64,000 bases of DNA from Bispira polyomma (taxonomy: Eukaryota): NCBI GenBank assembly GCA_965649765.1, contig OZ287748.1, positions 71,982,001 through 72,046,000 on the forward strand, read 5' to 3'. Numbering within the stretch: position 1 is the first letter of the stretch; each line of letters begins with the position of its first letter. Below are positions 2,831 through 40,012 of this stretch, piece by piece. A program made the translations under genes and the position numbers. The notes under the pieces were generated by a model. It saw only the letters and a list, made by a program, of their open reading frames with translations. It made no database searches and had not been told where the DNA came from.

Positions 2831-3467
2831 ACATTTTACATTTCTCAAGCTTCCTCCATATCCCTTTATGTTCTCCTCGTTAGCCCCCTTTAAGTCTCTC
2901 CTCCACCTTTGATGGCCCCCAAACTTTGGGGTATGATCCACTGGTCAGTGTTAGATTAGCATCCTCTGCCACATCCTTCACAAACAAGCGTCACATATAC
3001 TTCTTCAAACAAATCTTTTTGTGTGACCCAAATGTAATAACACCTTTTTTTCTATTTTCATATATTTTGCCTTTCTAGAGCCATTGTATCAAATACTGTA
3101 TCCATAATTTGGAAAAAAAGGACAAAGTATAATGACAGTGATTATTTTCAAACAGTTGGGAAAAACAAAACTTTAAAAAAACATTTTTTTATCGTTTAAA
3201 CCTGTTATAATTAGTTAATGTAACATCTAAGTTTATTAATTAACAAGCATAAACTTCAATTTGCTTCAATTTATAATCATTGTAAGGGAAAAAAATATTG
3301 TATAAAATGGCAAAGAGAGTGGGGGAAGATTTCCTGGTCAGGGGAGTATTTCCTAGAATATATGTTGTTGAAAGCAATGTCAAACTGGAAATAAATTCAG
3401 TCAATAGCAAAAAAGGGATCTTACTTTTACAATTATACAAAATAAATTCACAAACGAATGGACAACT

Positions 3468-3705
3468 GGGCTAGTATTCTCGAGTGTATATACTCAGCCC
3501 AAATTCATACTCTACTTAAATCTGTTCTCTTCAACTTTGGATAAATGTAAACATATCTAAAAATCTGTATTTGAATTCAGTGTTCAAAGCTCTATTAAAA
3601 TGAATGGTCACAAGTATAGGTTATTTCCGTTTACAAAATTCCTGCACAGCCTATATTTGAGTTAGATATAAAAGCATTAAGTTTATATTCAGAGAATACC
3701 AGCCC
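3468..3705. mobile_element. MITE with short TIRs; degenerate second copy at ~6200-6430
   Basis: Ends gggctagtattctc ... gagaataccagccc. The internal aaagctctattaaaat.aatggtcacaagtata is repeated at ~6313-6345. Confidence 0.6.
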
Positions 3706-4006
3706 TACATAAAGTACATACCAGTCTGTGATCATTGTATTAGTGGTATTTGTCTGGACAAATACCTGATCCAATTGAAGTTGTTTCTTGTTGTTTTCAC
3801 CAATAAACTTCTAAAAGCCTGGTCCACTTCTAAACCATTACAGAGATGAAATATTTAAAGGCAGAATTCCATGTCTAAAGTTATACTGCCAGTGAAGGTC
3901 ACAGTATTAGATATGCTCCTTGTTATTTGACAAGAAACAAAACAATGTAGATACTTCTCTTCGGAGCTCCTAAAGTGACAAAGTAAGGACGGAGAATCTT
4001 TTTATC

Positions 4007-4510
4007 TTGTTACCTAAAGGTAGTAAGTCATTACCTTAAGAAAGTATATTGTTACGTGAAGATAGAAAGTCGCTACCTCAAGATAATATATTGTTACCTC
4101 TAGATAAAAAGTTGTTACATCAAGATAATAAGTGCATACTCAAGATAATAAGTGGTTACCTGAAGATAGAAAGTTGTTACCTCAATTAGTATATTCTTAC
4201 CTCAAGATAGTATATTGTTACCTCAAGATAGAAAATTGTTATCTCAAGATAGTATTGTTACCTTAAGATGGAAAGTCATTCCCTCAAGTTAGAACGTTGT
4301 TACCTCAAGATAGTATATTGTCAGCTGAAGATAGGAACTTTTTACCTCAATTAGTATACTGTTACTTCAAGATAGTATATTGATACCTGAAGATAGGAAC
4401 TTGTTAAATTAGCATATTGTTACTTCAAGATAGTATATTGGTACCTGCAGATAGGAACTTGTTACCTCAATTAGTATATTGTTACCTCAAGATAGAAATT
4501 CATTACCTAG
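4007..4510. repeat. Minisatellite, ~20-21-bp unit (ttgttacctcaagatag[aaag/tatat]), roughly 24 copies
   Basis: Directly visible head-to-tail units with no unique spacers. Confidence 0.9.
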
Positions 4511-6734
4511 GGTTATTTTGCTCTACAAAATATTTGTAGAATTTGAAGAATATTGGTCATTTGCACAATTTTGCATAGAATTTAGTTTCTCAATCACTGA
4601 ACACTGTTCTTTTATTTTGTTTTCATCATTGTTTTAGTCTGTTTAAGAATATTCAAAACCTGAACAAGAAGGAGAAAGCTATCGTATATATATATTATCA
4701 GGCATACAAAAATACACAGAGCCCCAAAAATTAATGTATTTTAAGAGGTTCCCATTGATATATATGTGTCTAAATTATAAACTTCAAGCTGGGATGTTTA
4801 AGACAGAAACATATTAGCTCTAGACTCGCCCTTTTAGCCACATATCCGGTCATTAATTTGTCTGGGTGTAGATGAGAGAGACTATTTTAAGACAGCAAGC
4901 CTGACATAGATTCCACACAGTCAAACAAAAAGAGCTTTGTCTCCGTTAGAATGCGGCACATGAAGTTTAAAACCCAACTCTGCATATTTCAGTATGGCAT
5001 TCATCAAGGAACGTTTCAAATTAACTATGATAGCCTTGTCTAAGACTCACATTTTTTTATTTATTTCAGATTAGTTTCATTTATTGATCCATTCAAACAC
5101 ATGATGCATAGCTAACACAATATAAAAAATCATGAAAGTTAGAAGAATTACACAAGAGAAACATATTTGCAAACTGAAAGAGATAGAATTAATAGACAGT
5201 TTTAAATTAGATATAACTCCAAATATTTGATTTACATTATTTAATACAGAAGTAATCAAGCAAACAAATGAATTCTTCAACACTAATTGCAGAACCAGTT
5301 GCTCTGTGATACAAAAACATCCCTAATAATTAATCGCATATTAACATAAAGTATTTCAATAGCTACCTAGAGTAGTGGTGGCCTATTGGTTAGAAGTGTC
5401 TGGTTCATAATCACTGGGGGTACTTGGTCAAGGGTTTTGTGCACCGCGAACCACCGTCCAACGCCAAGTCCACTGCCAATGTTTCCAGATATATAAGCCA
5501 TGGCTGAGCACACATGAGATATAGTTAGTAGTTTGTGGGAAAAGAATGGAGGAATAAAAGTTCATTTCCGTTAGTAACCTTGTACATTCAACTGACCAGA
5601 AATGTTAAAAGTTCATAAATAACTAATTCCACAATATAACTTATTTTTTATGGAATGTCCATAGTTTTTGTGGAAAATTCAATAGTTTGTTTTAATATTT
5701 TGTGAATTATCCATGATTATGTGTCACAACTATTATACTGGGGAATAAATTTTACCTAATAAGCTTGAATTTTGTGGAAATAAATTTCCAGTGAAAAAAA
5801 GTAAAATAGCCAATAGTGAAACATCTATTATGTTTCTAAAAATCTTCTCTATTAAATCTGGCCTTTTTGAGATGACGTGAGCTGTTGAAAGTGATGTAAA
5901 TCCCAACTATTATTAAGATTGCTTCTGATACTGTCCACATGTATACACTATCTTAGAAACCACATGGAGATGTGATAGTCTAGTGGTTTTAAGTGTCTTG
6001 TTCACCATCACTGCCCTCTCAACAATGTGAGTCAGAAACCTGTTCACTTATTTATGTGGAAACGTTTGTCACAGGTTACTTCCACCTGTTAAATCTTGCC
6101 GTCTTGATGTGACCTAAGCTATTGAAAGTGACACATAAAATCCAATCAAATTTAAGTCTTAATAGAGCCTAGGACAAGGCTAAATCTCTAGGTGTCTGGA
6201 CTCGAATTCTCGGATATACTCAGCTCAAACTAATACTTAAATCTAGATTCTTTGTAACTCTAGATGCAGTAAACATATCTAAAATATGACTTTATATTTG
6301 AAGTCAGTATAGAAAGCTCTATTAAAATAAATGGTCACAAGTATAAGTTATTTCCATGTACAGGGATTTCCACTCATAGACTATACTTGACTTCAGTATT
6401 AGTTTGAGCATGAGTTTATTTGGCGAATGCCATTATTCTACTAGAAGTGTGAGCATTGGTTGTGTTTTTGTAAATATTTCAGGATCTTCATATATCTGGC
6501 TGCATCTTCAACACTGTCAAGGACGGCTCTGGTCACGTGTCATTGGATAAGAACCAATCAATCAACTGCCCTTTCACACCTTGACAAACAGTTGAAGGCG
6601 GTTTGAATTCGATCAACAGAACTGCAACAAAATAAGGAAAGACACCTCTGGTGATTTGAATCCCATACCAGATTGGAATCTGACCAGTAGTTCCATTTTT
6701 AGAGCTGTCATCAGTGATATTGAAAGGCTGACCG

Positions 6735-6810
6735 ATGTGTTCAAATATAATTGGTTGCCATGGAAACTCTTTGGCCTTGGAGATTTGTATCCTGGTCATC
6801 TTGATTTCAG
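6735..6810 (+). CDS. CUB-CUB-LDLa-TM (NETO-like) gene, coding exon 1 (signal peptide MCSNIIGCHGNSLALEICILVILIS)
   Basis: First ATG in an exon with acceptor tttcag at 6481-82. Hydrophobic stretch, then donor CAG|gtaagt in phase 1, which joins the phase-1 exon at 16814 in frame. Confidence 0.75.
6754..6767. promoter_or_regulatory. RFX X-box-like palindrome GTTGCCATGGAAAC
   Basis: Matches the GTTNCCATGGNAAC consensus. Function is not shown. Confidence 0.35.
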
Positions 6811-8753
6811 GTAAGTTGTTTTAAATCAAAAGTTCTTAAACATTATGGGTGATCTTAGAGAACTTTTTGAGCCTAAATCTTTGATGAGATTGGCTTTAAT
6901 AAATTTATATTTGTTTTAAAGATTTGTTTACACATTCCAAACATACTGCAACTTAGATCACTGACCTATTATTATGGATTATGTATTATGAATATCAAAC
7001 CTACATTTGATATGAACGATAAAATGAGCTTTTATCTCTTTGGAACTGAGTAATTATAATAATATATTGAAAGTATAACACCTGTAAATATAAACATAAT
7101 AGGTTACACAAATATTATAGGATTATAATATTAAATTGTTTTTTTTTTAATGAATCAAATAAACCTTATCAAGAGTTGACTTTTAAAATAAGCTATATGG
7201 GCACAGTGTGGATGGAATACGCTAACATTGATATGGCCACTATATTCGCTGTGTCTGATAACAATAAATCTGACATCCCCTTAGTTTGGCTGGTCGATTG
7301 CTTCCAACCAATCCACAAAGGGCTTACATAGCACCCTTTTCAGAATAAAAACAATATCAGGCAAGGCTTGATCAAAATACATTAAATCCGAGAATCATGT
7401 AGCAAACGCCATTTGCAGATAGCAGGCTTTCTCATTATAGTTGGTAAGCTTCTTGTGAATGCTCTGGGGGCCTTAGTGGTTTAGGGGTTAACACTCTAAC
7501 CTCAGCCTCTGTAGGTGTGAAAAAATGAGCACTTTACAATACAGAAATCTCTATTCGGTCTCTGTACCAGTGATTCATCGTGATGTACCCAACAAGAGGT
7601 TGAATGCGACATTACAGCTTAAGTACAATATTAAAAAATATGACCAACTCAATTTTATCAATCGTAATAAACCTTGGATTCTTGAATAAAGCCATAGAGT
7701 ACCTCGAACAACTTTGTCTATTTGTATTTTAATCAGCGAGAGTTTGGGCCACAATAATATCGTAACTGTAAATATTGTACTGTAATTGTGATGGCATTTG
7801 TAGGTAATCTTCGGTATTATTGACTTTTCGCAGACTAATCGACACGACTGGTTAAATAACTGCAATTTTTGGTTATTGTTGTTTTTTTTCTGGATATCTT
7901 CTTACAAACTTCTATTGATTTTGTGATAAGGGGTGTAACCTAAACCTAATTACATGAAAGGTCAATAACAGAAAATAACAATAGCATTACCAGGTATTGC
8001 AAATTTTATTAATTCTTCTTAGATTTCATGTATAATTAATGCTATTCTTTAAAATTCAACTCTTTTGGGCAGATTTTCTATGTATTACTGTTGTCATCTT
8101 GGTTTACCTTAGACTTGTTAGACTTCCCTGTCCCGCTACCCCTCCCTCCCCCCTCTACTTCAGTTGTCCCATCCCTGGAGCTGAAAGCCCATCAGCAGAT
8201 TGGTTATCAGCATGGCACATGAATAGTAGTATCACCTACACTAGGCCACCGCAATTTAGTCCACAGCTGCAAAAGGGAGTGATTGTTAAACACTTACAAT
8301 GCGGCCAAAATTTGACCCAGAAAAAAAGTGAATTATAAACATTGATATCCAACTGATTTTACTGTTATAATCATTCCCCAAATAAGAGTAATTTATTAGT
8401 AATCTTAACCAAAATATAAACATGTGTCCTTTCTTTGTGTGGTGTGTACAACTATGCAGATATTGCTGGTGAAACCCCCTTCTTTGCATATAAGTACAAA
8501 ATGTAAATTGTTTACATTGATCAAAAGACATCTGATTTTTTTGTTATGCATATATAACTGTGCAGATATAAGACTGGTATATCAATAGCAACATTGACAT
8601 GTTACTGAAATTTTTAAAAAAAATGGGAAGCTCCATTAATAAATCACCTCTGCTATAAAATATTGTAAAATAAGCCTAGATGTACTGCTATTTTTTGTAG
8701 CAAGATTGTTTCCATGAAACGTATTTCTATATCAACTTCTTTACGTTACTCGA

Positions 8754-29500: not shown

Positions 29501-30769
29501 AAATGGATTTTTGATTTGTGTATGAGGCGATCAAAGGGACATAGAGGAACAATATAAAAAATCAACAATGTAAGAATATTTAAATGATAAAATATATCTG
29601 AAAAACTAAGTTTAAATGTATACTGTCCATTGGTATATATTTTATAGTTCCAAAAGAAAGCAGATGTTTTAGTATCCCGAGTATGAGACTTAAGCAAGGT
29701 TAGGTTAGATTAAACCAAAGTGTGAGTAATATTAACTCCGATGATAAACCACTTACATGAAAGATTATCCTAAATTGTAGCTAGCACTAGACTATTAACT
29801 TCTATCCCTTTCTTTTACATAAAGAAATATATTGTGGACATTCTGACATGGCTCAAACTAAACTGATGTGTCACACCCATGCGTCTTTAAAGCAATATTT
29901 TATAATGCAATTTGAAGTCTAGCTTTAGGTAATCAAAATACCCGATGAAAACAATATCAAAAGAAACTTCAAAGAGTAATGTTTTATTATCTTAAAGCGG
30001 ATAAAGAATGCCCCCCTCCATCTCTGGATTTAAAGCTGTTATTTTTATGGAAACCTATTTATCCAAGGCATGGACCATTACACTTATCAATTCCGACAGA
30101 AAATTTTACATCTCATTTCTTGCTGCAAGAAAGGAGATTACCATTGAATACCAAAGATATACAATGTGTGAGATAAATCTACAGGAGTGATTTTAAGAAA
30201 ACAACGTCATGTATTCACATCTTTCTTTAAAATGCATATTACATCTTGATTATTTACATCATGATGATTCCTTTAAGCTATATTTTCCTGTTGCAAATAT
30301 AGGAAACTGTTACCTCAGTCCAAAAAGTACAACCCACCTTAGTTTTTGCTACCCACCTTTACTTATTGCACTCCACTTTACTTCATACTTCATTGACTTC
30401 CAATCATATTATAGCTACCCCTTTAGCATAGCTGTACTTTGTAAATCTTCATCATATCATTGAATGACAAAAAGCAAGAAACAGCACAGAAATTGTACAT
30501 CTTTTTACTGTGTTACATCTTAACTAACTTTCTCTCAAGCCTTTTTTTATATAAATTTTTTTTATTTACACAAATAACATTACAATTACAGTTATACAAG
30601 ACAGTAAGACAGTGTACGAAACAATAATAAAGTTACAAATTACATACAAAGGACAATTTTTACCAGTCAGTACAATAATACATTGAAATAGAGGTTTTAC
30701 CATTTTTTTAAAGCTAATTACGTTCGTTTTCAGAAAGTTAAACCAGCTAGAGAGTAAGTTTAGGTAGAA

Positions 30770-31109
30770 AGTAGTCTTTTTTATATAAAGTTGAAATTCA
30801 GTTCTAGAAATTGACACCAAAACCATATTATTTAAGTATTTTAGTCAAAAAACACCATTTAACGGTATCAAAGGTATTTTCAAAGTCTGCTAGCAGGATA
30901 AAACATAAAATTTTATGACACTTACAATAGTCAATATGATCAGAAATTAGTCTAATGTTTTCGCCACAATACCTATTTTCTATATATCCTACCTGATCAG
31001 GACTAATAATTTCTGTCAATCTTATTTTCAGCCTGTTACTTAATACTTTACCGAGGATCTTATAATCTGTGTTTAAAATAGAGAGAGGACGCCAGGATTT
31101 CAAGTCAGT
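30770..31109 (-). pseudogene. LINE ORF2, RT domains 1-3 (part downstream of the YR insertion)
   Basis: TDLKSWRPLSILNTDYKILGKVLSNRLK...DQVGYIENR..GENIRLI...DFENTFDTVKW. The rest of RT is deleted. Confidence 0.9.
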
Positions 31110-31503
31110 ATTGTAGTCACTGCTCGCAACGCATGGCTAGTCAGTCATGAAGTTGTAATACCTTACTGTATTATTTATTTACTTAAGAATTGTTTACCTA
31201 GATATACCAATCCTAGACCAGAACCTCTCTTACCTCACTACAAATCAAATTCCTTAGGGTTAAGTCAATTTCCCGCCTTTTCTCATATTTGGTCATTATT
31301 AAGTTGCAAGTTAATGAAGCAACACCTTGAAATTACATTGGAATCGGCAAATAGAGCCGCCATATTGGAAATAAGTGATCGTGCAAATGGAAACAAGCAT
31401 ATTTTATACTTATTAGACATTATTTTACGTTTATGTTCGGTGATTTTAGTCAGTTTTAACTTCTGTCATCTTATAGTGTGCCTTTTGAATTGGATATCTC
31501 ATT

Positions 31504-32871
31504 ATGGGCCGAGGAAAGAAAAAACAGGTGACTGTAGCTTTGTGTTCATGCTGTAATTATTCACACCCTTGACCAGTGGGTAATAGGTGCTGTCAAGTCA
31601 TCGAAGATGAGTTATCAGAGGCAGAAGCCAGCAGAGTCTTTTCTACTGAAGTTCATGGAGCAGAAGGTGAAACTAGCACGCCCAACTCCGTCGCCGACTC
31701 GAGTCACATTTCCGAAGATCATGTGAGTTCTGGGCAGTTTTAAAAAGACATTTTCACAGAGCAGCAGTCTATGATGAAAACACTAGTTTTCACAGTAGCT
31801 AAATTACAGGAAGACGTATCCGACTTAAAGACGTCTCGTTCGTCTTCCCCTCAGGTCCCGTCAACACCTCAGATGATTAGGCCTCAGATGGCAGCTCCAC
31901 CTAAGCTTCCAACACCACTTACACAGAACATAGGTTCTTCTTTACCATTCACTCAGGACTTCTCTCAGTTCCAGAACCCTGCAGCGAATTACCCAGGAGT
32001 CAACGATTTTCGTCCCCACGTTTCTCATGATACGTACCCGACACGTTACAACACTCACTTCCCAGAGACACGACCAGACCTTTTGACAACTCAACGGGAG
32101 GGTTACACTCAGGACCACGCTCAGAGGTTGCTACAGGATGCAATCTTACCTACTCCGGATGTATTAAAGCAGTCCTCTATGATACAGAACGAGGTCTCAC
32201 AACGTTTAGCCCGTTATGAGGCATGGGCTGCTGACGAATCGCTTCAAGGTAAGCTCAGTACTAAACGCAAATCTGGTCGGTACAATGTATCTGAGGTGTG
32301 TGTTACCGACCCAATAAAACGTTGGTCAAATGAAGCATCTTTATCTGGCATTAACAAGAAACGAGTTTCTTATGATGAACTTACTGTGTCACAATTTGCT
32401 GCAGGTCAATTGCAGAACATTTTAGAAGTGAGAAACCCTACTATTTCTCGCGCCATGTTAATTTAGTTAGCAGATACTTTAAAAGATGCTTCTAACATCT
32501 CCTGGCAGGTAGCCAGAGGTTCTTATGCATGCAACATGCACGATGTGGAAGAGGGGCTCCTCAGCTGGGTAGATGAAACTAGGTGGATGATGAACCGACT
32601 GTCCTATTCGCAGGCCTTAATTTCAAACGGCTCGTCTTCAAATTCAACCTCCTCGAATTCCTCCTCGGCCACCGGAAAGCATGAGATGTCATGCAAGCAC
32701 TATCAGAAGAATACGTGTCAGCATTAAAAGGACCACGAGGGCAACAACGCCATTTTTAAACATATCTGTGCCAATTGTTTTTATTTGAATAAGAAGCAGA
32801 ACGCATACCCAGAATCCAAGTGTTTTAAACTCTACGGACGACCCGCAGTGCCTACCAACACACCCCAATAG
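31504..32871 (+). pseudogene. YR element gag-like ORF (~455 codons, 4 premature stops)
   Basis: One frame from ATG 31504 (MGRGKKK..CSCCNYSHP*PVGNRC) through ORFs 31771-32466 and 32536-32727 to a C-terminal Cys/His cluster (CKHYQKNTC.H..DH...HICANC...YPESKC). Stops at 31570, 31741, 32464 and 32725. Confidence 0.85.
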
Positions 32872-33619
32872 GGGTGCGGACTTTCGACAGTCACCACAGC
32901 CAGTAGTTATATACAGTGTGTTAAACCGGATGTCGAGAATGCAGAGCAGGAGCATTGTGAGAGCATGAACTTAAGACATGAGTATAATAAGCAAAATTTT
33001 GAATTAGTTAACCAAAGGAACATTTTTATGAACAGTATGAGCTTTAGGGATGGACAGTTCCTAAATGATTGTTCTCATGATGTAGTCACGACAGATGGAC
33101 AAAATAGCGTTTCGTGTAGTAGAGATTCAGCTTCATATCCTGTTGGTCACAAGTTGTGTCCAGCAAAAATTGATGTCAGTAATGGTTTTATTGCAACCTC
33201 TTTTTTGGTTGTCTAGTAATCACAGTTATTATGGCCTTAAAGGCCCAGTGTATTATATTGTTTGTAATGTTGACCCCAGTGTGTCAGGTGTATACACTTG
33301 GGTCTTCTTTCAAGGTCAATGGTCACTTCAGAAACATGATCTCTCTCTGATAAAAATGTGGCCAATCAGTTTTGTTCACACATTATCTGTACCTGTTTTA
33401 GTTAGAAAGACTGTTTCACATAGCAAGGTTCAACCTTTACCAAGACCTAAGAAGGTCACTCATACCCGTACAAAAATCAGTTCTTCTGATTATTATATTA
33501 ACATCATTGACAACATTTGTAGACAAACCACACAAACAACATACAACAAGCATATAAACACACATGTGAATGACAAGTTCCTTTCATGAAACCATACAAT
33601 AACTGAGGACACACATATA

Positions 33620-35455
33620 GTGACCAACCTTCCACAGGACGTTGTACTACAAAACGATTCCATACAGGACTCGTTCACAGTTGAAAAAATTTTGAATGAG
33701 GACATTTTACCTACGGACCAAAGAACTTATGGCTTCATCTCTCAAGGGAGAAACCAATTTTACTTCATAAGACCAGACAGACAACAGGTAGACTTGACTT
33801 CTTATGATAAGTTAATTGAAGTAGCTGACATCATAAAAACTACTAAGGTACCAAATTACAGACAAGCGCGTTTCTCCATCAAAAGTGATCTCAATGTTCT
33901 CAATTGGAAGAAATACTTAGTCGATTATCCGGATCAAATTGTTTTGCAGTATGTAGAATTCGGGTTTCCTATATCTCTGTATGAGAGGGACAGATTGAAG
34001 GTCATAAATGTCAAAAACCATTATTCGGCTATGACGTTTCCACAAGCCATTGAGAAGTATTTTGTTACAGAAGTAGCTAAGTGCACCATAGTGGGCCCTA
34101 TTTTAGAAAAACTTCACCCGGATATACATTGTTCACCTTTATTAACTGTACCCAAAGATACTGATCAGCGTTGTTTAGTCCTAAACCTTTCTCACCCCCT
34201 TGGACAATCTGTAAATGATTGTACAATTAAAAATAAATATGATAACGTCGAGTTTAACTTAAGGTTACCTACCATTGATCAAATTACTACCCGTATTGTT
34301 GAGTTAGGAGCTAAGGCCACCTTAGCGAAAGTGTACGTCGCTCACGCGTTTAGAAATTTAAGAATTGATTCTTTTGATTGTTTGAAGTTAGGTTACTTTT
34401 GGAAAAATAATTATTTCATTGATCTTAGTTTAACTTTTGGACTCACCCACGGCACGGCGGCCTTTATGATGGTTTCTGATTGTATTACTTATATTGTTAG
34501 ACAGAAAGGGTATATAGTCTACAATTATATAGATGATTTCATACTCATTGAGACTGAAGATAAGGCTGACTTAGCTTATACTACTTATACTATTCTAGCA
34601 GACCTAGGTCTCCCCATTAATGCGAAGAAACTAGTTCCCCCCAGTAAGCGTGTAACTTGCATGGGTATCACCATTGACATAGACCTTGAAACACTCAGTA
34701 TTGAACAAACTAAATTAGACTCCATATTTGATACCTGTGTAGAATGTAAATACTTGCATAAAGTACGTAAACAGAAGTACCAGTCACTGCTGGGAAAGTT
34801 ATTGTACATACAGCGCTGTGTAACGAATTCTCAGATATTTATGAACAGAATGTTAACTTTATTAAGGCAGTCCGCTAGTAGTAAAACAGTACTTTTGACA
34901 AGCGAATTTCATAAGGATTTACAATGGTTCTTAACTTTTCTCAGACAATTCAATGGTACAACTAAGTACCCATACTTGGATAGTTCACGTGACGTTCTAC
35001 TACAAGTCGACGCTTGTTTATCCAGAATCGGTGGGATTTCTGGTTTAGAGGTTTTCAAAGCCCCTCTACCATGCTTCCTTAAACAAACACTTTCCATTGT
35101 CCATTTTGAAATGGTCAGTATTCTCATAGCTTTCGAATTATGGGGTCACAAATGGAGTAATAAAAAGATCAAGATACAATCGGATAACATGGCTGTGGTG
35201 TCTGTTGTACAGTCATCCAGAACCAGAGACGACTACTCAGGCTTGTGTTTAAGGAATATCTGGCAGATCTGTGCCTTAAGGAATATTGACTTGACTATCA
35301 GACATATACCTGGCAAGGATAACATAATAGCAGACGCTCTATCTAGGTGGTTTGAACTAGACCATTATGATAGTACAATAAAACAAGAACTCGTAGACAA
35401 CTTCACCATGCATGACATACCTATTGAATTTTTTACCTTAGATACTTATGTGTAA
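33620..35455 (+). CDS. YR element reverse transcriptase-RNase H
   Basis: HCSPLLTVPK, LVLNLS, FGLTHG, YIDD. RNase H VDAC, E, SDN, NIIADALSR. The first RT Asp appears as Tyr (AKVYVAHAFR). The frame extends upstream to 33086 through a TGA at 33587. Confidence 0.93.
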   Translation: MTNLPQDVVLQNDSIQDSFTVEKILNEDILPTDQRTYGFISQGRNQFYFIRPDRQQVDLTSYDKLIEVADIIKTTKVPNYRQARFSIKSDLNVLNWKKYLVDYPDQIVLQYVEFGFPISLYERDRLKVINVKNHYSAMTFPQAIEKYFVTEVAKCTIVGPILEKLHPDIHCSPLLTVPKDTDQRCLVLNLSHPLGQSVNDCTIKNKYDNVEFNLRLPTIDQITTRIVELGAKATLAKVYVAHAFRNLRIDSFDCLKLGYFWKNNYFIDLSLTFGLTHGTAAFMMVSDCITYIVRQKGYIVYNYIDDFILIETEDKADLAYTTYTILADLGLPINAKKLVPPSKRVTCMGITIDIDLETLSIEQTKLDSIFDTCVECKYLHKVRKQKYQSLLGKLLYIQRCVTNSQIFMNRMLTLLRQSASSKTVLLTSEFHKDLQWFLTFLRQFNGTTKYPYLDSSRDVLLQVDACLSRIGGISGLEVFKAPLPCFLKQTLSIVHFEMVSILIAFELWGHKWSNKKIKIQSDNMAVVSVVQSSRTRDDYSGLCLRNIWQICALRNIDLTIRHIPGKDNIIADALSRWFELDHYDSTIKQELVDNFTMHDIPIEFFTLDTYV

Positions 35456-36452
35456 TGTCAGATACCTCTGACTCAGCCTCCTCACTGATCAAAGGAGCTT
35501 TGAGACGACTAGGACAAAGCCACAGACCTAGGACACAAAGACAATATGATAGCCAGTTCAGACTTTTCTTGAGCTTTACAGTTTACTTTGATTTGAGGCA
35601 AACCTTTAGCTTTAACAGCATTATAGCCTTTTTAGAATTTATGACACAAACAGGTGTCTCTTACAAAGTATTGAGTAATTACTTATCTGCCATTAGGCAC
35701 AACACAAAAATCCTTAACATTCAGCAAACAGATCTTTATGACCCTAGATTGCCATTATATTTGAGGTCATTAGAACTCACTTCGAAATACACACCTCGGG
35801 TCAAAGGGGTATTTGATTTGCACCAATTGCAACAAATTTCACAAGCTTGTAACCAGTTTAAATTTCCTGACTTATTCAGAACAGCTTTTTTGTTTGCTTA
35901 TTTTGGATTTTTACGCATTTCTAACCTGACCACCACATCAGATCTCCCCTGTGACCCTACCAGACACCCAACAAGGGCTGACGTGTTGCTCGCCCCCCCC
36001 CCCCCCCCCCCGGCATTCACCTCATATTACAATGGAGTAAGACTAACCAAACCAGAAAAAATCCAGATATTATACAACTACCAGAACTCTCAAACCCATG
36101 GCTCTGTCCTGTGAGGGCAGCCACTTCCCTATTTAACAAATACCCTCTGGCCCCTTCTTACCCATTACTAGCAAACCCACTAGATAAAGGCCAGTGCCTT
36201 TCAAACTCGAGCTTAATGCATACTCTTAGTACTATTTTAACGCAGTTGAATATCCCAAAAGAAGGGCATTCTTTCCATTGCTTCAGGCGTTCAGGAGCCT
36301 CCTTGGCATTCAATGCTAACGTCAAACTTCAGCATATCCAAAAGCATGGATGCTGGAAGTCAGATGCTGTTTCGTCTTACCTTCAATCTACCTCTCATGT
36401 TTCCATAATTATTCCAACCACTTTCGCATCCCTCGTCTCTTCTACTTTCTAA
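35455..36452 (+). pseudogene. YR element tyrosine recombinase, frameshifted at a C19 run (35993-36011)
   Basis: Joined frames give FGFLRISN, WSKT, LCPVRA, HSFHCFRRSGA, HGCWKSDAVSSY, i.e. the R-K-H-R-H/W-Y catalytic set. Confidence 0.93.
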
Positions 36453-36647
36453 TTTGGCTTTGGCATTTTAAATTTTTTAATCAAAAATTTATTGTACAGT
36501 TGTATATAGAGACGAGTAGCTAGAATAAAATTATCCCAAACAGCATCTGATTCCTCACTCTCAATAACTATGACCTTTAAAGGTCATTCCTTACACCTCA
36601 AGGTCAGAACAACATTGGTTCAATCTCTCACCACAACAAAAACGACT

Positions 36648-38225
36648 GAGGTGTTTATCCTTTTTAGGTATGAGATTAATTACCCCCCGGCCTCTGACTC
36701 TCTGACAGTTCACCATTCTCAAAGACATTTGAGAAACTTTTAAACACATGGTCACCTATTTCAGTCCAAAAGGTCATGTAAAATTCACAAGGTATTCCAT
36801 CGGGTCCTGGTGTTTTATTATTAGCCAGATAATTTACAGTTTTTTTAACTTCTTCAAATGTAATGGCTTCTTCACAAAGAGATTTACTTCTATCAGATAT
36901 GATGGGAATATTGACATTGCTTGGATATTTTTCCACATTAAGTTGTGATTTATCCATATTTGTATTCAATTCAGAGTATAGTTTTGAGAAATATGTAACT
37001 AGAATATCATCAGGCTTAGTAAACCTTTTGTCTTTGTGCATTGGATCACAAATGTGTTTAACATTATGATTGGCCTTTTCTAGATTTAGAAAGTATTTAG
37101 TGGGTTTCTCAAAATCCTCCAAAAACTTACATCTCGACCTTATGAATGAACTGTGTGCCCTTTCATCGTGTAAATCCTCTAATTGTTTTTTGATGAGATT
37201 GTACTCTTCAATACAACCTAATATTGGAGTACTACAGATATTTTCCTCCACTTTAATCAGTCGTTTTTTTTCTAAATTTCTAAATTCAATTTTTTTTCTT
37301 TTACTTTACTTAATGGAAAAAGTAATTGACTCAGTTCTTATCATACATTTTATGAAATCCCATGATTTAGAAATGTCTTACAAATTTTTCGAATCATTAA
37401 CTACATTCTTAATGACCGTTTTCATAAAGTCAACATATTCTTTATCTTTCAGTAGGCTTACATTTAACTTCCACAAGCCTCTCCCCTTTTTTGTTTATGA
37501 TCTAGAATTAATGAAATTTTGAGTAAGTTATGGTCAGACTTTATACTAGGTAGAATTTTGACTACTTTTGTATTGTATTCTAGGCCACATGATACAAGGA
37601 AAAAGTCAATTCTAGATTGTTGAAAGCCAGAACGTGTTTTTTCTCATCTTATATATCGAGTGGTATCAGAGTGTTTTATTCTTCAGATAACATCTAAAGG
37701 AATCATCAACTGTGACAAATGCTTTATATAACCTGGGTTTTTACACAAGATACTTGTATCATGGATGCTATATAGATTTATATTAAAATCACCCCCAATT
37801 ACAATGCTTCCACCAACATAGTTTAAAAGACTGTTTAATAAATATTTCCCAAAGATCTATTGTTCCGGTGTTTTGTCTATTATAGGAGCATACAAATTAA
37901 CAATTATGTATCTCTGGTCTGATATTGTACAATCTAGCAGTAGAAATCTACCAAAGTCATCATTTTTTATATCCAATATAACCATATCTATGCCAGGGGA
38001 AGTTAATATTGCAACTCCTCTACTATTTGAGGTACCATGAGAAAATTCAATTGTTCCATCCCATTGGTTTCTCCACAATTTTTCAGTGATACTTGATGAA
38101 TGAGATTCTTGTATTAGGAATAATGCAGGCCCCATCCCCTTAAACCAGGAGAAAATAGTTTGTCTTTTACATTTATCACCCAAGCCTCTTGTATTAAAGC
38201 AAAATATATTAAAAATATCACCCAT
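36648..38225 (-). pseudogene. LINE ORF2 N-terminal part (APE endonuclease and linker)
   Basis: ORFs 37857-38249 and 36676-37251 plus decayed intervening sequence (GGDFN, SRIDFFL, SDH, GLWKLN, EKPTKYFLNLEK). Confidence 0.9.
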
Positions 38226-39102
38226 TATATGCAAATATATAATCGTCATTAATTTTATCCACTGGCTTAGATACCTTTATCACCTCAAAATTGTTGGTCA
38301 TACTCCAAAAAGAAATAATGCCAAATACTGAAATGTTTTGTTACATCCTGTAGCCATGCCATTGTATTTACTATACTTAATAATATAATATACTGATCAT
38401 ATAATCACAATATATATAAGAATTAAAAAAAGCAAAAACAGACAAAAGACACAATAGTTTTACTACCTTGTCTTGCTAAAGTATTTAGAACAACAACAAA
38501 ACACATAAAAATAAACATGAAAGAACAATATACATACCATACTCTATAAACCGAACATGCCATGCTAAGTAATACATAAAAAGTGCCATATAAAAAGTGC
38601 CATCCAAATCTAACACTTTTTTTAATCCCTTGCAAAAGGCGGTCATTACTGTTAATTGATAGGTATTAAGTTAGCTTACAGTTAATATAAGTGAATCAAA
38701 GCCAAACATAGAAGAGGTGCAGTGTATCAGTATATCAATCTGAATTATTACACAATATTGTAACAACATGTATGCCACAATAATCACATGACACAATGTC
38801 AGACAGTTTGATGGCATATCATCAGCTAATAATTAATACAAGACTTGCTTGTTTTAGACAATATATTTATAACTCCCTTTATTAGACTTCTTTATGTGGA
38901 GTTATTACGTTTCAAAAATAGCATACCAATATGCCACTAAAAGAAAATGTGAGCATATTTTTAATTACTATCCTATGTGACACAGTGACAGATGTGACAC
39001 ACACATAAAACACACACAAAAAAACGCACACACTCACGTCATGTTAACTTCTTTCATCTAGGATTTTGATTTTGAGATTTACAGTAGAATTTGTGCTACC
39101 CC

Positions 39103-39300
39103 TTATATCAAAGTATCTCTGACTTTCATTAACAATGAGCCTAGTGCGGTTTTTCCTTTCCACTTTTCCGCCAACCAAACATTACGATTATTAAGAAACC
39201 AAGCACAAGACCAATAAGTGTCATTACCATTTGCCTCGATGATTTGTTTACCTTTTAAGTTCAACAAAAAGGCTCTAAGCTCTGGATTTTGAACAAATTT
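39103..39300 (-). pseudogene. C-terminal half of a NADAR (YbiA/COG3236) domain at the end of the LINE upstream ORF (ORF1), 5'-truncated
   Basis: Open frame KFVQNPELRAFLLNLKGKQIIEANGNDTYWSCAWFLNNRNVWLAEKWKGKTALGSLLMKVRDTLI* fits the NADAR pattern KFxQNxxLxxxLL...EA...DxxW...WxGxNxLGxxLMxVR. It lies inside the TSDs, on the same strand as ORF2. Confidence 0.85.
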
Positions 39301-40012
39301 TCTCTCAAGCTTACATCTTATGACCTTTAATGTGAACTTGAACTTATCTTAGTGGACTGCAAGTTAACATGCAGTATTAGTGAACATAAGTGGACTGGTT
39401 AAAATGTTGTATTTTGAAACCCTCCTCAATCTGCCCAAAATATTTAGAACTGTAGTATTCCACGTAGAATTTTTCCGCTTTTTAATTAAAATGTATATTT
39501 TTACTCCACTCTTTAGAAAACAAGTTAAGATATTGTATTTCTATAATGCATCTACTACATATATTCTGCACAGTACTTTTTATGGTAGTGCTTTTATAGT
39601 TAATCCAATATCCCTATCTGAATATCTTCATACATACTGTGTTCATTTTGTTGGAAGGAAACTAACACGTAATCGAACCAATAGCACATCAAACATTTAA
39701 TATTTAACGGGTGTTTAAGTATAGACTTAATATATTGTCTTTTCCAAGCACATCGTACAATACATGTCAGAAGAATATTCTTCATCTCATCTCCTATACT
39801 AAACATCTATTAACCGATATTTATTCCAATTTCATCAAAAAAATTTAGCAACCCTGTATAATTTATATTGGCACTATCTACAGTATGCAAGAAAATTATC
39901 TTGGCCGTTCGTGTATGTAGTTCCAGATTTTACCATCTATTCAAACTCATCGGAATTGATGACGACAGCTATAGATAGTCATGTTAGATCACTGTTGGTC
40001 ATATATTTGCAG

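What the first reader, a model, noticed from the sequence alone, without database searches (positions are those of the whole stretch)
39103..39300. A NADAR (ADP-ribosyl-guanine hydrolase / YbiA N-glycosidase family) domain carried by an L1/Tx1 retrotransposon
Seen: a stop-free 65-aa minus-strand frame (KFVQNPEL..FLL...IIEANGNDTYWSC...WKGKTALGSLLMKVRDTL*) lies inside the LINE's 12-bp TSDs, on the ORF2 strand, ends ~880 bp before the ORF2 ATG, and is cut exactly at the 5' truncation point. The ORF track misses it because it has no start codon. Established: this is the C-terminal motif set of NADAR proteins, which include the DarT1 antitoxins that remove ADP-ribose from guanine in nucleic acids and YbiA-type N-glycosidases; some large RNA viruses also carry NADAR. 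Typical L1 ORF1 is coiled coil-RRM-CTD. Inference: this LINE family has an ORF1-NADAR fusion that could erase host ADP-ribosylation of its RNA/cDNA, a counter-defence against nucleic-acid ADP-ribosyltransferases. I cannot confirm whether this has been described. Two positions deviate from consensus (GxN as GKT, WxxG as WSCA), possibly through decay.
Basis: partly seen in the sequence, partly recalled or inferred. Interest (0 to 1): 0.9.

Follow-up and report, generated by a model that had tools for sequence, protein, structure and literature searches.

The report
Dead LINE copy with NADAR-tailed ORF1
This is the broken front end of a jumping gene (an L1-type LINE) whose RNA-binding ORF1 protein ends, across the family, in a conserved NADAR enzyme domain of the kind that removes ADP-ribose from DNA/RNA bases. 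The fusion is real and abundant in this genome, has been mentioned once before for oyster LINEs, and its function is untested.

Summary
Window 39300-39106 (-) encodes 65 aa that match Pfam NADAR above its curated cut-off (E 4.8e-13, profile positions 100-162 of 163).

The fragment is the 5' end of one LINE insertion, 39298-30541 (-). The insertion is bounded by a 12-bp target-site duplication, which two uninterrupted paralogous "empty sites" confirm.

The fragment is not a host exon and not a one-off capture:
- Decayed copies of the same lineage carry the rest of ORF1 upstream of it.
- Intact relatives in the genome encode ORF1 = coiled coil-RRM-CTD-NADAR, then a ~0.9-kb spacer, then a 1270-aa APE-RT ORF2 collinear with human L1 ORF2p.
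- An AlphaFold model of one ORF1 matches both the NADAR structure 8BAU and human L1 ORF1p.

Family-wide evidence:
- The genome gave 2,147 first-look NADAR candidates. About 60 of the 150 that were scored lie in open frames of at least 400 aa.
- NADAR is the best-conserved ORF1 domain.
- The catalytic Glu/Lys/Glu equivalents are kept in 21-22 of 22 diverged ORF1s.

The window copy itself is dead: it is 5'-truncated, its ORF2 is split by a nested Ngaro-like element and shortened, and two near-invariant NADAR positions are mutated.

NADAR in ORF1 of oyster Tx1 LINEs was noted in one sentence of PMC12477816. This scan also noted the fusion on eight other windows of this genome, and one follow-up reached the same verdict. 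The proposed counter-defence role is plausible but untested, and I found no base-directed ADP-ribosyltransferase in the genome.

The parts
39299..39310 (-). 5' target-site duplication GCTTGAGAGAAA. The junction with the LINE is ambiguous by 2-3 nt because of A-run microhomology.
   Evidence: D3. Empty-site alignments with L065 and L064.
39106..39300 (-). C-terminal 65 codons of the NADAR domain of the LINE's ORF1. This is the 5'-truncated end of the element. The stop codon is at 39105-39103.
   Evidence: tblastn with an intact relative's ORF1 covers aa 356-427. Same-lineage copies L054 and L055 match from 39305 and 39300.
38226..39102 (-). ORF1-ORF2 spacer of about 0.88 kb. Its proximal part, 38739-38299, is shared with other copies of the lineage.
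   Evidence: The intact relative L056 has a 911-bp spacer.
36654..38225 (-). ORF2 5' part: APE endonuclease and the start of RT. ORF2 aa 5-243 lie at 38222-37500 and aa 248-536 at 37485-36679, with a frame break between them.
31111..36653 (+). Nested insertion of about 5.5 kb of a Ngaro/DIRS-like element that splits the LINE's ORF2. It is not part of the LINE.
   Evidence: The LINE copy L059 is contiguous across this point: 36654 aligns to L059 5502 and 31110 to L059 5496. ORFs. Weak RVT_3 hit. Scan note s1-611882.
30807..31110 (-). ORF2 RT fragment (aa 542-640). The remaining ~630 codons of ORF2 are missing from this copy.
30541..30806 (-). Rearranged 3' remainder ending in an A-rich tail (…TATATAAAAAAAG). 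The last ~170 bp recur elsewhere in the genome at 89-94% identity.
30529..30540 (-). 3' target-site duplication GCTTGAGAGAAA.

Best explanation
What it is (shown): window 39298-30541 (-) is an old, dead, 5'-truncated copy of an L1-group (L1/Tx1-like) non-LTR retrotransposon. Target-primed reverse transcription stopped inside ORF1, so only the last 65 codons of ORF1 were copied. Those codons are the C-terminal half of a YbiA-type NADAR domain. In intact members, ORF1p is a normal L1-type RNA-binding chaperone (coiled coil, RRM, CTD) with a complete NADAR domain added at its C-terminus. A long spacer and an APE-RT ORF2 follow.

How it most likely works (inferred, about 35-40%): ORF1p coats the element's own RNA in cis, which holds the NADAR hydrolase on the LINE ribonucleoprotein. 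There it removes ADP-ribose from guanine or cytosine bases of the LINE RNA, the nascent cDNA or the target DNA. This would keep the template readable by the RT and would undo an ADP-ribosylation-based block.

The window copy can do none of this. It lacks the half of the domain that carries the first catalytic Glu and the Lys.
For: Shown:
- NADAR profile hit above the curated cut-off.
- TSD confirmed by two empty paralogous sites.
- Same-lineage copies link CTD and NADAR to the window-type spacer and to ORF2.
- Intact relative L056: ORF1 of 416/431 aa with NADAR at E 2e-43; ORF2 of 1270 aa with Exo_endo_phos, RVT_1 and zf-RVT. Its ORF2 is collinear with human L1 ORF2p 8UW3 (E 8e-89, residues 3-1198).
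- AF2 model with pLDDT 88.7. Foldseek hits: 8BAU NADAR 7.5e-12, YbiA 2B3W 1.6e-8, human L1 ORF1p trimer 2YKO 2.1e-7.
- Copies 97.9-99.3% identical over ~6.7 kb, ending in poly(A).
- 2,147 first-look NADAR candidates. All 150 scored are over the cut-off, and about 60 lie in open frames of at least 400 aa.
- The same architecture occurs in another assembly. At least 150 distinct 50%-identity clusters of full-length ORF1-NADAR proteins exist in public data.

Constraint:
- NADAR is the most conserved ORF1 domain: mean pairwise identity 0.45 against 0.27-0.36 for the others.
- Equivalents of P. nicotianae E43, K50, K75, E125 and D130 are kept in 22/22, 21/22, 22/22, 21/21 and 20/21 sequences.
- Between lineages, synonymous sites are saturated (pS 0.84) while NADAR pN is 0.38.

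For the mechanism (from the literature):
- Those residues are the ones needed for ADPr-guanine hydrolysis (PMC11543638).
- All tested YbiA-type NADARs hydrolyse ADPr-guanosine in DNA (PMC11125620).
- A sponge NADAR and YbiA-type NADARs also reverse ADPr-cytidine (PMC12945103).
Against: - There is no biochemical or expression evidence. No RNA run holds the element.
- Six-frame searches of the genome found no Scabin/pierisin-like (PF22596), Enterotoxin_a (PF01375) or DarT (PF14487) transferase. These searches also rang in none of the control genomes, so the blank is weak evidence.
- Some ADPr-contacting residues of 8BAU are changed in L056: D86 to Q, R93 to M, W133 to F.
- YbiA itself is a riboflavin-intermediate N-glycosidase, so another substrate is possible.
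- Within-family dN/dS is low (0.04-0.16). It rests on few changes, and the loci were picked by their NADAR score.
Confidence: 0.85

Rival explanations
1. The NADAR domain is a real, selected part of ORF1p, but its job is not reversal of base ADP-ribosylation. Alternatives are processing of NAD- or ADP-ribose-derived groups on RNA ends or caps, general 'RNA processing' of the transposition intermediate (as PMC12477816 suggests), or a metabolite N-glycosidase activity like E. coli YbiA.
For: - The family is YbiA-type, with Glu in the last strand, and YbiA has a metabolic N-glycosidase role.
- No base-directed ART was found in the genome.
- Several ADPr-contacting residues differ from 8BAU.
- PMC12477816 proposes RNA processing.
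Against: - Every YbiA-type NADAR tested so far hydrolyses ADPr-guanosine (PMC11125620).
- The catalytic triad and the K75 equivalent are invariant.
- A metabolic role is hard to reconcile with fusion to an RNA chaperone that acts in cis.
Confidence: 0.3
2. The fragment is a one-off: a 5' transduction or template switch of this single LINE copy onto a host NADAR mRNA.
For: A DNA search with the spacer and NADAR found few copies that cover the NADAR part. Most relatives matched only the part next to ORF2.
Against: - Same-lineage copies L054, L055 and L059 carry ORF1-NADAR in the same position.
- At least six deeply diverged lineages in the genome, and elements in another assembly, have the same fusion followed by ORF2.
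Confidence: 0.02
3. The frame is the last exon of a host NADAR gene that merely lies next to a LINE.
For: An acceptor-like TTGCAG lies 60 bp upstream. The frame stays open to 39348, and Pfam extends its alignment slightly into that stretch.
Against: - The upstream stretch is a dispersed repeat that continues, in uninterrupted copies, into the sequence on the far side of the LINE.
- The NADAR piece therefore lies inside the TSD-bounded insertion.
Confidence: 0.01

Closest known systems
Tx1 LINEs of Crassostrea gigas (Repbase) whose ORF1 proteins carry YbiA-family NADAR domains, as remarked in PMC12477816 (Genome Biol 2025)
   Same: A LINE ORF1 protein with a YbiA-type NADAR domain in an invertebrate genome. 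This is the same kind of element.
   Different: - That paper gives one sentence and a supplementary alignment, with no anatomy, copy numbers, structure or catalytic-site analysis.
- I could not compare sequences directly, because no Repbase references were at hand.
- Assignment of the present elements to the Tx1 clade rather than L1 sensu stricto is untested.
- The organism of this genome is not known to me.
Canonical L1 ORF1p (human LINE-1 ORF1p, PDB 2YKO/2LDY)
   Same: - The predicted coiled coil-RRM-CTD architecture matches (Foldseek E 2e-7, TM 0.69 by target).
- Sequence motifs of the NNLRIxGIxE and RxHRLG type are present.
- ORF2 is collinear with L1 ORF2p.
   Different: - An extra ~160-aa enzymatic NADAR domain follows the CTD.
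- There is no Pfam Transposase_22 hit.
- The ORF1-ORF2 spacer is 0.9 kb or more. By my recollection, not checked here, the human L1 spacer is a few tens of bases.
YbiA-family NADAR hydrolases (P. nicotianae NADAR 8BAU; E. coli YbiA 2B3W)
   Same: - Same fold (TM 0.77).
- Catalytic E43, K50 and E125 equivalents are present, with Glu in the last strand.
- Pfam score 148.9 bits.
   Different: - The domain is fused to a retrotransposon RNA chaperone rather than standing alone.
- D86, R93 and W133 equivalents are substituted in L056.
- Activity is untested.
DarT1-NADAR toxin-antitoxin systems and phage gp30.3 NADAR counter-defence
   Same: The proposed logic is the same: a mobile element carries a NADAR to undo base ADP-ribosylation of its nucleic acid.
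   Different: - There is no linked transferase.
- The last-strand residue is Glu, not the Asp of the DarT1-linked BC4488 type or the His of phage NADARs.
- The host is a eukaryote.
Gypsy LTR retrotransposons of Ectocarpus with an N-terminal NADAR in Pol (PMC12477816)
   Same: A retroelement that has acquired a YbiA-type NADAR.
   Different: A different element class, a different host protein (Pol rather than ORF1p), and probably an independent acquisition.

Membership tests
NADAR superfamily, YbiA type (PF08719) | Profile match above Pfam's gathering score | tested here: met
   - Window fragment: 50.1 bits against a cut-off of 35.1, covering only profile positions 100-162 of 163.
- Intact relative: 148.9 bits over positions 9-162.
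NADAR superfamily, YbiA type (PF08719) | YbiA fold (helical core flanked by two small sheets) | tested here: met
   AF2 model of the relative's ORF1 against 8BAU: E 7.5e-12, TM 0.77. Against 2B3W: E 1.6e-8. The 65-aa window fragment was not modelled on its own.
NADAR superfamily, YbiA type (PF08719) | Catalytic Glu (E43), Lys (K50) and last-strand Glu (E125), in P. nicotianae numbering | tested here: met
   - Family: 22/22, 21/22 and 21/21 sequences keep them.
- Window copy: only the E125, D130 and W133 equivalents are present (IIEANGNDTYW). The E43/K50 half was never copied, so this copy cannot be active.
NADAR superfamily, YbiA type (PF08719) | ADP-ribosyl-base hydrolase or N-glycosidase activity | not testable with these tools
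   Needs an enzyme assay.
L1-group non-LTR retrotransposon (L1/Tx1) | ORF2 with an N-terminal APE endonuclease, RT and a C-terminal zinc-binding region, collinear with L1 ORF2p | tested here: met
   - Pfam Exo_endo_phos, RVT_1 and zf-RVT.
- 8UW3 E 8e-89 over residues 3-1198. R2 proteins match only in the RT, at E 7e-25 or weaker.
- The window copy holds ORF2 aa 5-640 only.
L1-group non-LTR retrotransposon (L1/Tx1) | ORF1p with coiled coil, RRM and CTD | tested here: met
   Foldseek 2YKO E 2.1e-7 and 2LDY E 6.6e-5. Helix 27-100 followed by a beta-alpha-beta region in the model. The sequence profile Transposase_22 did not hit.
L1-group non-LTR retrotransposon (L1/Tx1) | TPRT hallmarks: TSD, A-rich or poly(A) 3' end, 5' truncation | tested here: met
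   - 12-bp TSD with empty sites.
- A-rich tail in the window copy and poly(A) in L056.
- Truncation within ORF1.
Tx1 clade specifically | RT phylogeny placing the element with Tx1 references; often site-specific insertion | not tested
   No reference Tx1 or L1 sequences were available. No sign of site specificity: copies sit in different flanks.
DarT1-NADAR toxin-antitoxin | Adjacent DarT1 gene, and Asp (BC4488 type) in the last strand | tested here: not met
   The last-strand residue is Glu. DarT PF14487 gave no match in the genome. The neighbour is ORF2.

The most novel reading that the evidence does not exclude
ORF1p-tethered NADAR is a retrotransposon-encoded anti-restriction enzyme. It would erase guanine or cytosine ADP-ribosylation placed on LINE RNA, cDNA or the target site by a host or microbial transferase that has not been identified. 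That would reveal base ADP-ribosylation of nucleic acids as an animal genome-defence layer against retroelements.
Probability: 0.25. Interest if true: 0.8.

Novelty: new member of a known kind. Interest (0 to 1): 0.45.

Why it matters
Few LINE ORF1 proteins are known to carry an enzyme. Here a catalytically intact NADAR has been kept on an L1-type ORF1p across many deeply diverged and recently active lineages.

NADARs are known erasers of ADP-ribose on guanine and cytosine in nucleic acids. Their roles in animals are stated in the literature to be unknown (PMC11125620).

If the domain protects LINE RNA or cDNA, it would be the eukaryotic transposon counterpart of two known systems. One is phage NADAR counter-defence. 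The other, from my general knowledge and not checked here, is the viral macrodomain. It would also point to an unrecognised host defence.

The natural intact copies give ready material for a direct assay. The window fragment itself is only a dead witness of the family.

Tried and rejected
- **Upstream extension of the NADAR match.** Pfam extends the match to 39330 and the frame is open to 39348. I rejected this as real NADAR, because that stretch is the flanking repeat.
- **Host terminal exon with the TTGCAG acceptor.** Rejected for the same reason.
- **Site-specific (Tx1-style) insertion.** L063 proved to be an uninterrupted repeat copy, and L056 and L057 have unrelated flanks.
- **Sequence-profile recognition of the ORF1 N-terminal part.** No Transposase_22 hit at E up to 1, only coiled-coil noise. 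The structure search settled the question.
- **Within-family dN/dS.** The values are low, but they rest on few substitutions and on loci chosen by NADAR score, so I treat them as weak. Between-lineage dS is saturated, so I report only pN against pS.
- **Expression.** No RNA run holds the element. Only three DNA-type runs from one study do.
- **Host transferases.** PF22596, PF01375 and PF14487 gave no hits, with controls silent.
- **Taxonomic range.** Cluster look-ups gave no names. The homologue searches gave none either, apart from one ORF2 relative filed under a MAG. The ESM Atlas gave only a weak 'Annelida' label.
- **Consensus.** Only natural copies were compared.

Full report
**1. The observation**

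Scanned alone, these residues hit Pfam NADAR (PF08719) at E 4.8e-13. The score is 50.1 bits against a curated cut-off of 35.1, over profile positions 100-162 of 163. They also hit TIGR02464 (the YbiA-type N-glycosidase domain) at E 2.8e-10. So this is the C-terminal 40% of a NADAR domain, not a chance frame.

The frame stays open upstream to 39348, and Pfam stretches its alignment by nine more positions there. As shown in section 2, that stretch is flanking DNA and the extension is fortuitous.

**2. Is the fragment part of the LINE?**

The 12-mer GCTTGAGAGAAA occurs at 39310-39299 and at 30540-30529. Twelve-base repeats arise by chance in a 12-kb region, and one search lists several, so I looked for an independent test.

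The DNA just outside the 5' copy (39362-39296) is itself a dispersed repeat. In two uninterrupted copies of that repeat elsewhere in the genome (L065 on C4, L064 on C8), the sequence matching window 39359-39299 runs directly into the sequence matching window 30540-30311. Only the 12-mer is shared between the two halves. These are paralogous empty sites.

Everything from 39298 down to 30541 is therefore one insertion flanked by a true target-site duplication, and the NADAR codons are its first bases. The 3' end is A-rich (…TATATAAAAAAAG) directly before the TSD.

**3. Anatomy of the window copy**

I used the proteins of an intact relative as probes and a same-lineage copy, L059, as a DNA guide. 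On the minus strand the element reads as follows:

- NADAR codons at 39300-39106, with the stop at 39105-39103.
- A spacer of about 0.88 kb.
- An ORF2 start at 38225. This ATG aligns with the relatives' start; an earlier in-frame ATG lies at 38249.
- ORF2 aa 5-243 at 38222-37500.
- ORF2 aa 248-536 at 37485-36679, after a frame break.
- A 5.5-kb nested insertion at 31111-36653. It lies on the plus strand and is Ngaro/DIRS-like. L059 is contiguous across this point.
- ORF2 aa 542-640 at 31103-30807.
- About 270 bp of rearranged 3' sequence.

The last ~630 codons of ORF2 are missing. The copy is old and dead.

**4. Is NADAR a regular part of this LINE?**

In the window's own lineage:

- L054 and L055 are decayed copies. 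They match the window's NADAR DNA at 90% and 83% identity, starting exactly at 39305 and 39300, and they match its spacer.
- Upstream of that point they continue, through many stops, into the rest of a NADAR domain and an ORF1 CTD.
- L059 matches the window's spacer and ORF2 at 83% and has an ORF1-NADAR remnant upstream.

Across the genome, NADAR is massively repeated:

- The Pfam profile gave 2,147 first-look candidates.
- All 150 that were scored exceed the cut-off (137-156 bits).
- About 60 of those lie in stop-free frames of at least 400 aa.

One such element, L056 on C7, is complete:

- ORF1 spans 786/831-2081 (431 aa from GTG, 416 aa from the first ATG).
- A 911-bp spacer follows.
- ORF2 spans 2992-6804 (1270 aa).
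- It ends in a 3' UTR and poly(A), about 7.05 kb in all.

Other copies of it are 97.9-99.3% identical over their length, so the family was active recently.

Domain evidence for L056:

- ORF2 carries Exo_endo_phos, RVT_1 and zf-RVT. It aligns end to end with human L1 ORF2p (8UW3, E 8e-89, residues 3-1198), whereas R2 proteins match only in the RT.
- ORF1 has NADAR at residues 267-412 (E 2e-43) but no sequence-profile hit in its first 250 residues.
- An AlphaFold model built on a 22-sequence alignment has mean pLDDT 88.7. It shows a 74-residue helix, an RRM-like beta-alpha-beta unit, a small alpha/beta CTD and then the NADAR fold.
- Foldseek returns P. nicotianae NADAR 8BAU (7.5e-12, TM 0.77), E. 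coli YbiA 2B3W (1.6e-8), and the human LINE-1 ORF1p trimer 2YKO (2.1e-7, TM 0.69) together with the RRM-CTD structure 2LDY.

ORF1p is thus a canonical L1-type chaperone with NADAR appended after the CTD.

The fusion is widespread:

- At least six deeply diverged lineages in this genome share the architecture, at 30-36% ORF1 identity to L056.
- Elements in another public assembly have it too.
- A profile search of 1.84 billion representative proteins returned at least 150 distinct 50%-identity clusters matching over essentially the whole ORF1. The 150th still scores E 1e-88.

**5. Constraint and catalytic competence**

The residues that matter come from the P. nicotianae and E. coli C7 work. 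E43, K50 and the last-strand E125 are needed, K75 is implicated in substrate handling, and D130 and W133 contact the pyrophosphate (PMC11543638).

- I mapped the L056-8BAU alignment onto the 22-sequence alignment.
- The equivalents are conserved in 22/22 (E), 21/22 (K), 22/22 (K75), 21/21 (E125) and 20/21 (D130) sequences.
- The Glu in the last strand marks the YbiA subfamily, not the DarT1-linked (Asp) or phage (His) types (PMC11125620).
- NADAR is the best-conserved part of ORF1. Mean pairwise identity is 0.45, against 0.27 for the coiled coil, 0.36 for the RRM and 0.34 for the CTD.
- Between lineages, synonymous sites are saturated (pS 0.84) while NADAR pN is 0.38, lower than 0.46 for the RRM-CTD.
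- Within the young family, NADAR dN/dS is 0.04-0.16. This rests on few changes and on loci chosen by NADAR score, so I give it little weight.

The window fragment keeps the E125, D130 and W133 equivalents. It has T for the near-invariant N399 and SCA for the G-x-G motif, consistent with decay, and it lacks the E43/K50 half altogether.

**6. Mechanism**

These points are shown: the fusion exists, it has been retained over a long time, its catalytic residues are intact, and it is physically linked to an RNA-binding, cis-acting chaperone.

The function is inferred. All YbiA-type NADARs tested hydrolyse ADP-ribosyl-guanosine in DNA (PMC11125620), and animal (sponge) and YbiA-type NADARs reverse ADP-ribosyl-cytidine (PMC12945103). 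The most likely role is therefore removal of base-linked ADP-ribose from the LINE RNA, the cDNA or the target DNA. I put this at about 35-40%.

Against it:

- Six-frame searches of the genome found no Scabin/pierisin-like, Enterotoxin_a-like or DarT-like transferase. The control genomes were also silent, so the blank is weak.
- No RNA data were available.
- Three ligand-contacting residues differ from 8BAU.

The main rival (about 30%) is another NAD- or ADP-ribose-related or RNA-processing chemistry, as PMC12477816 suggests.

**7. What is known**

A full-text search found one relevant paper. PMC12477816 (Genome Biol 2025, Ectocarpus transposons) reports Gypsy elements with NADAR. [quoted passage not shown] The NADAR biochemistry papers list molluscs among NADAR-bearing animals and call the animal roles unknown, without mentioning transposons.

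This scan has also noted the same fusion on eight other windows of this genome, and one follow-up reached the same verdict.

The finding is therefore a further, well-documented member of a kind already mentioned in print, not a new kind.

**8. Verdict**

Interest is moderate: the biology is attractive and directly testable, but the association is already published in passing and the window copy is only a dead fragment.

Noticed in passing
window 31111-36653 (+): A ~5.5-kb Ngaro/DIRS-like retroelement is nested inside the LINE's ORF2. It has a 611-aa RT/RNase H-like ORF (33620-35455, weak RVT_3 hit) followed by two overlapping ORFs (35455-36114 and 36111-36452) with no Pfam hit. The scan has already noted it (s1-611882).
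   Followed up: partly
window 39299-39362 and 30311-30540; L063, L064, L065, L066: The LINE landed in a dispersed repeat of unknown type that is present on at least four other chromosomes at 80-90% identity. Those copies served as empty sites.
   Followed up: partly
L068:7001-15161 (ENA ERZ22147071, another assembly): A NADAR-tailed ORF1 (393 aa) is followed on the same strand by a 229-aa GDSL-lipase/esterase ORF (Pfam E 4.4e-9) and then an RT ORF. This may be a three-ORF LINE with two accessory hydrolases, or a nested insertion.
   Followed up: no
L056:2082-2991; window 38226-39102; L060, L067: The ORF1-ORF2 spacers in these LINEs are long, from 0.9 to about 2 kb, and contain no ORF of 120 aa or more in L056. 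What drives ORF2 translation is unknown.
   Followed up: no
L051:5060-6530; L056:1-90 and 7278-7349: The intact element on C7 sits inside an array of a 39-bp satellite (unit AAATCTAAGGTGTCCCTATGTCTGGCTAGTGAGAAGATT).
   Followed up: no
P0138: A 4,240-aa predicted protein in public data has seven NADAR stretches. It is probably a gene model fused across tandem LINE copies, but it could be a real multi-NADAR protein.
   Followed up: no
ESM Atlas clusters: Clusters of 415-489-aa proteins that are 100% NADAR carry the label Eukaryota, most often Annelida. This hints that the ORF1-NADAR architecture extends beyond molluscs. Only 1-3 members per cluster have a recorded phylum.
   Followed up: no
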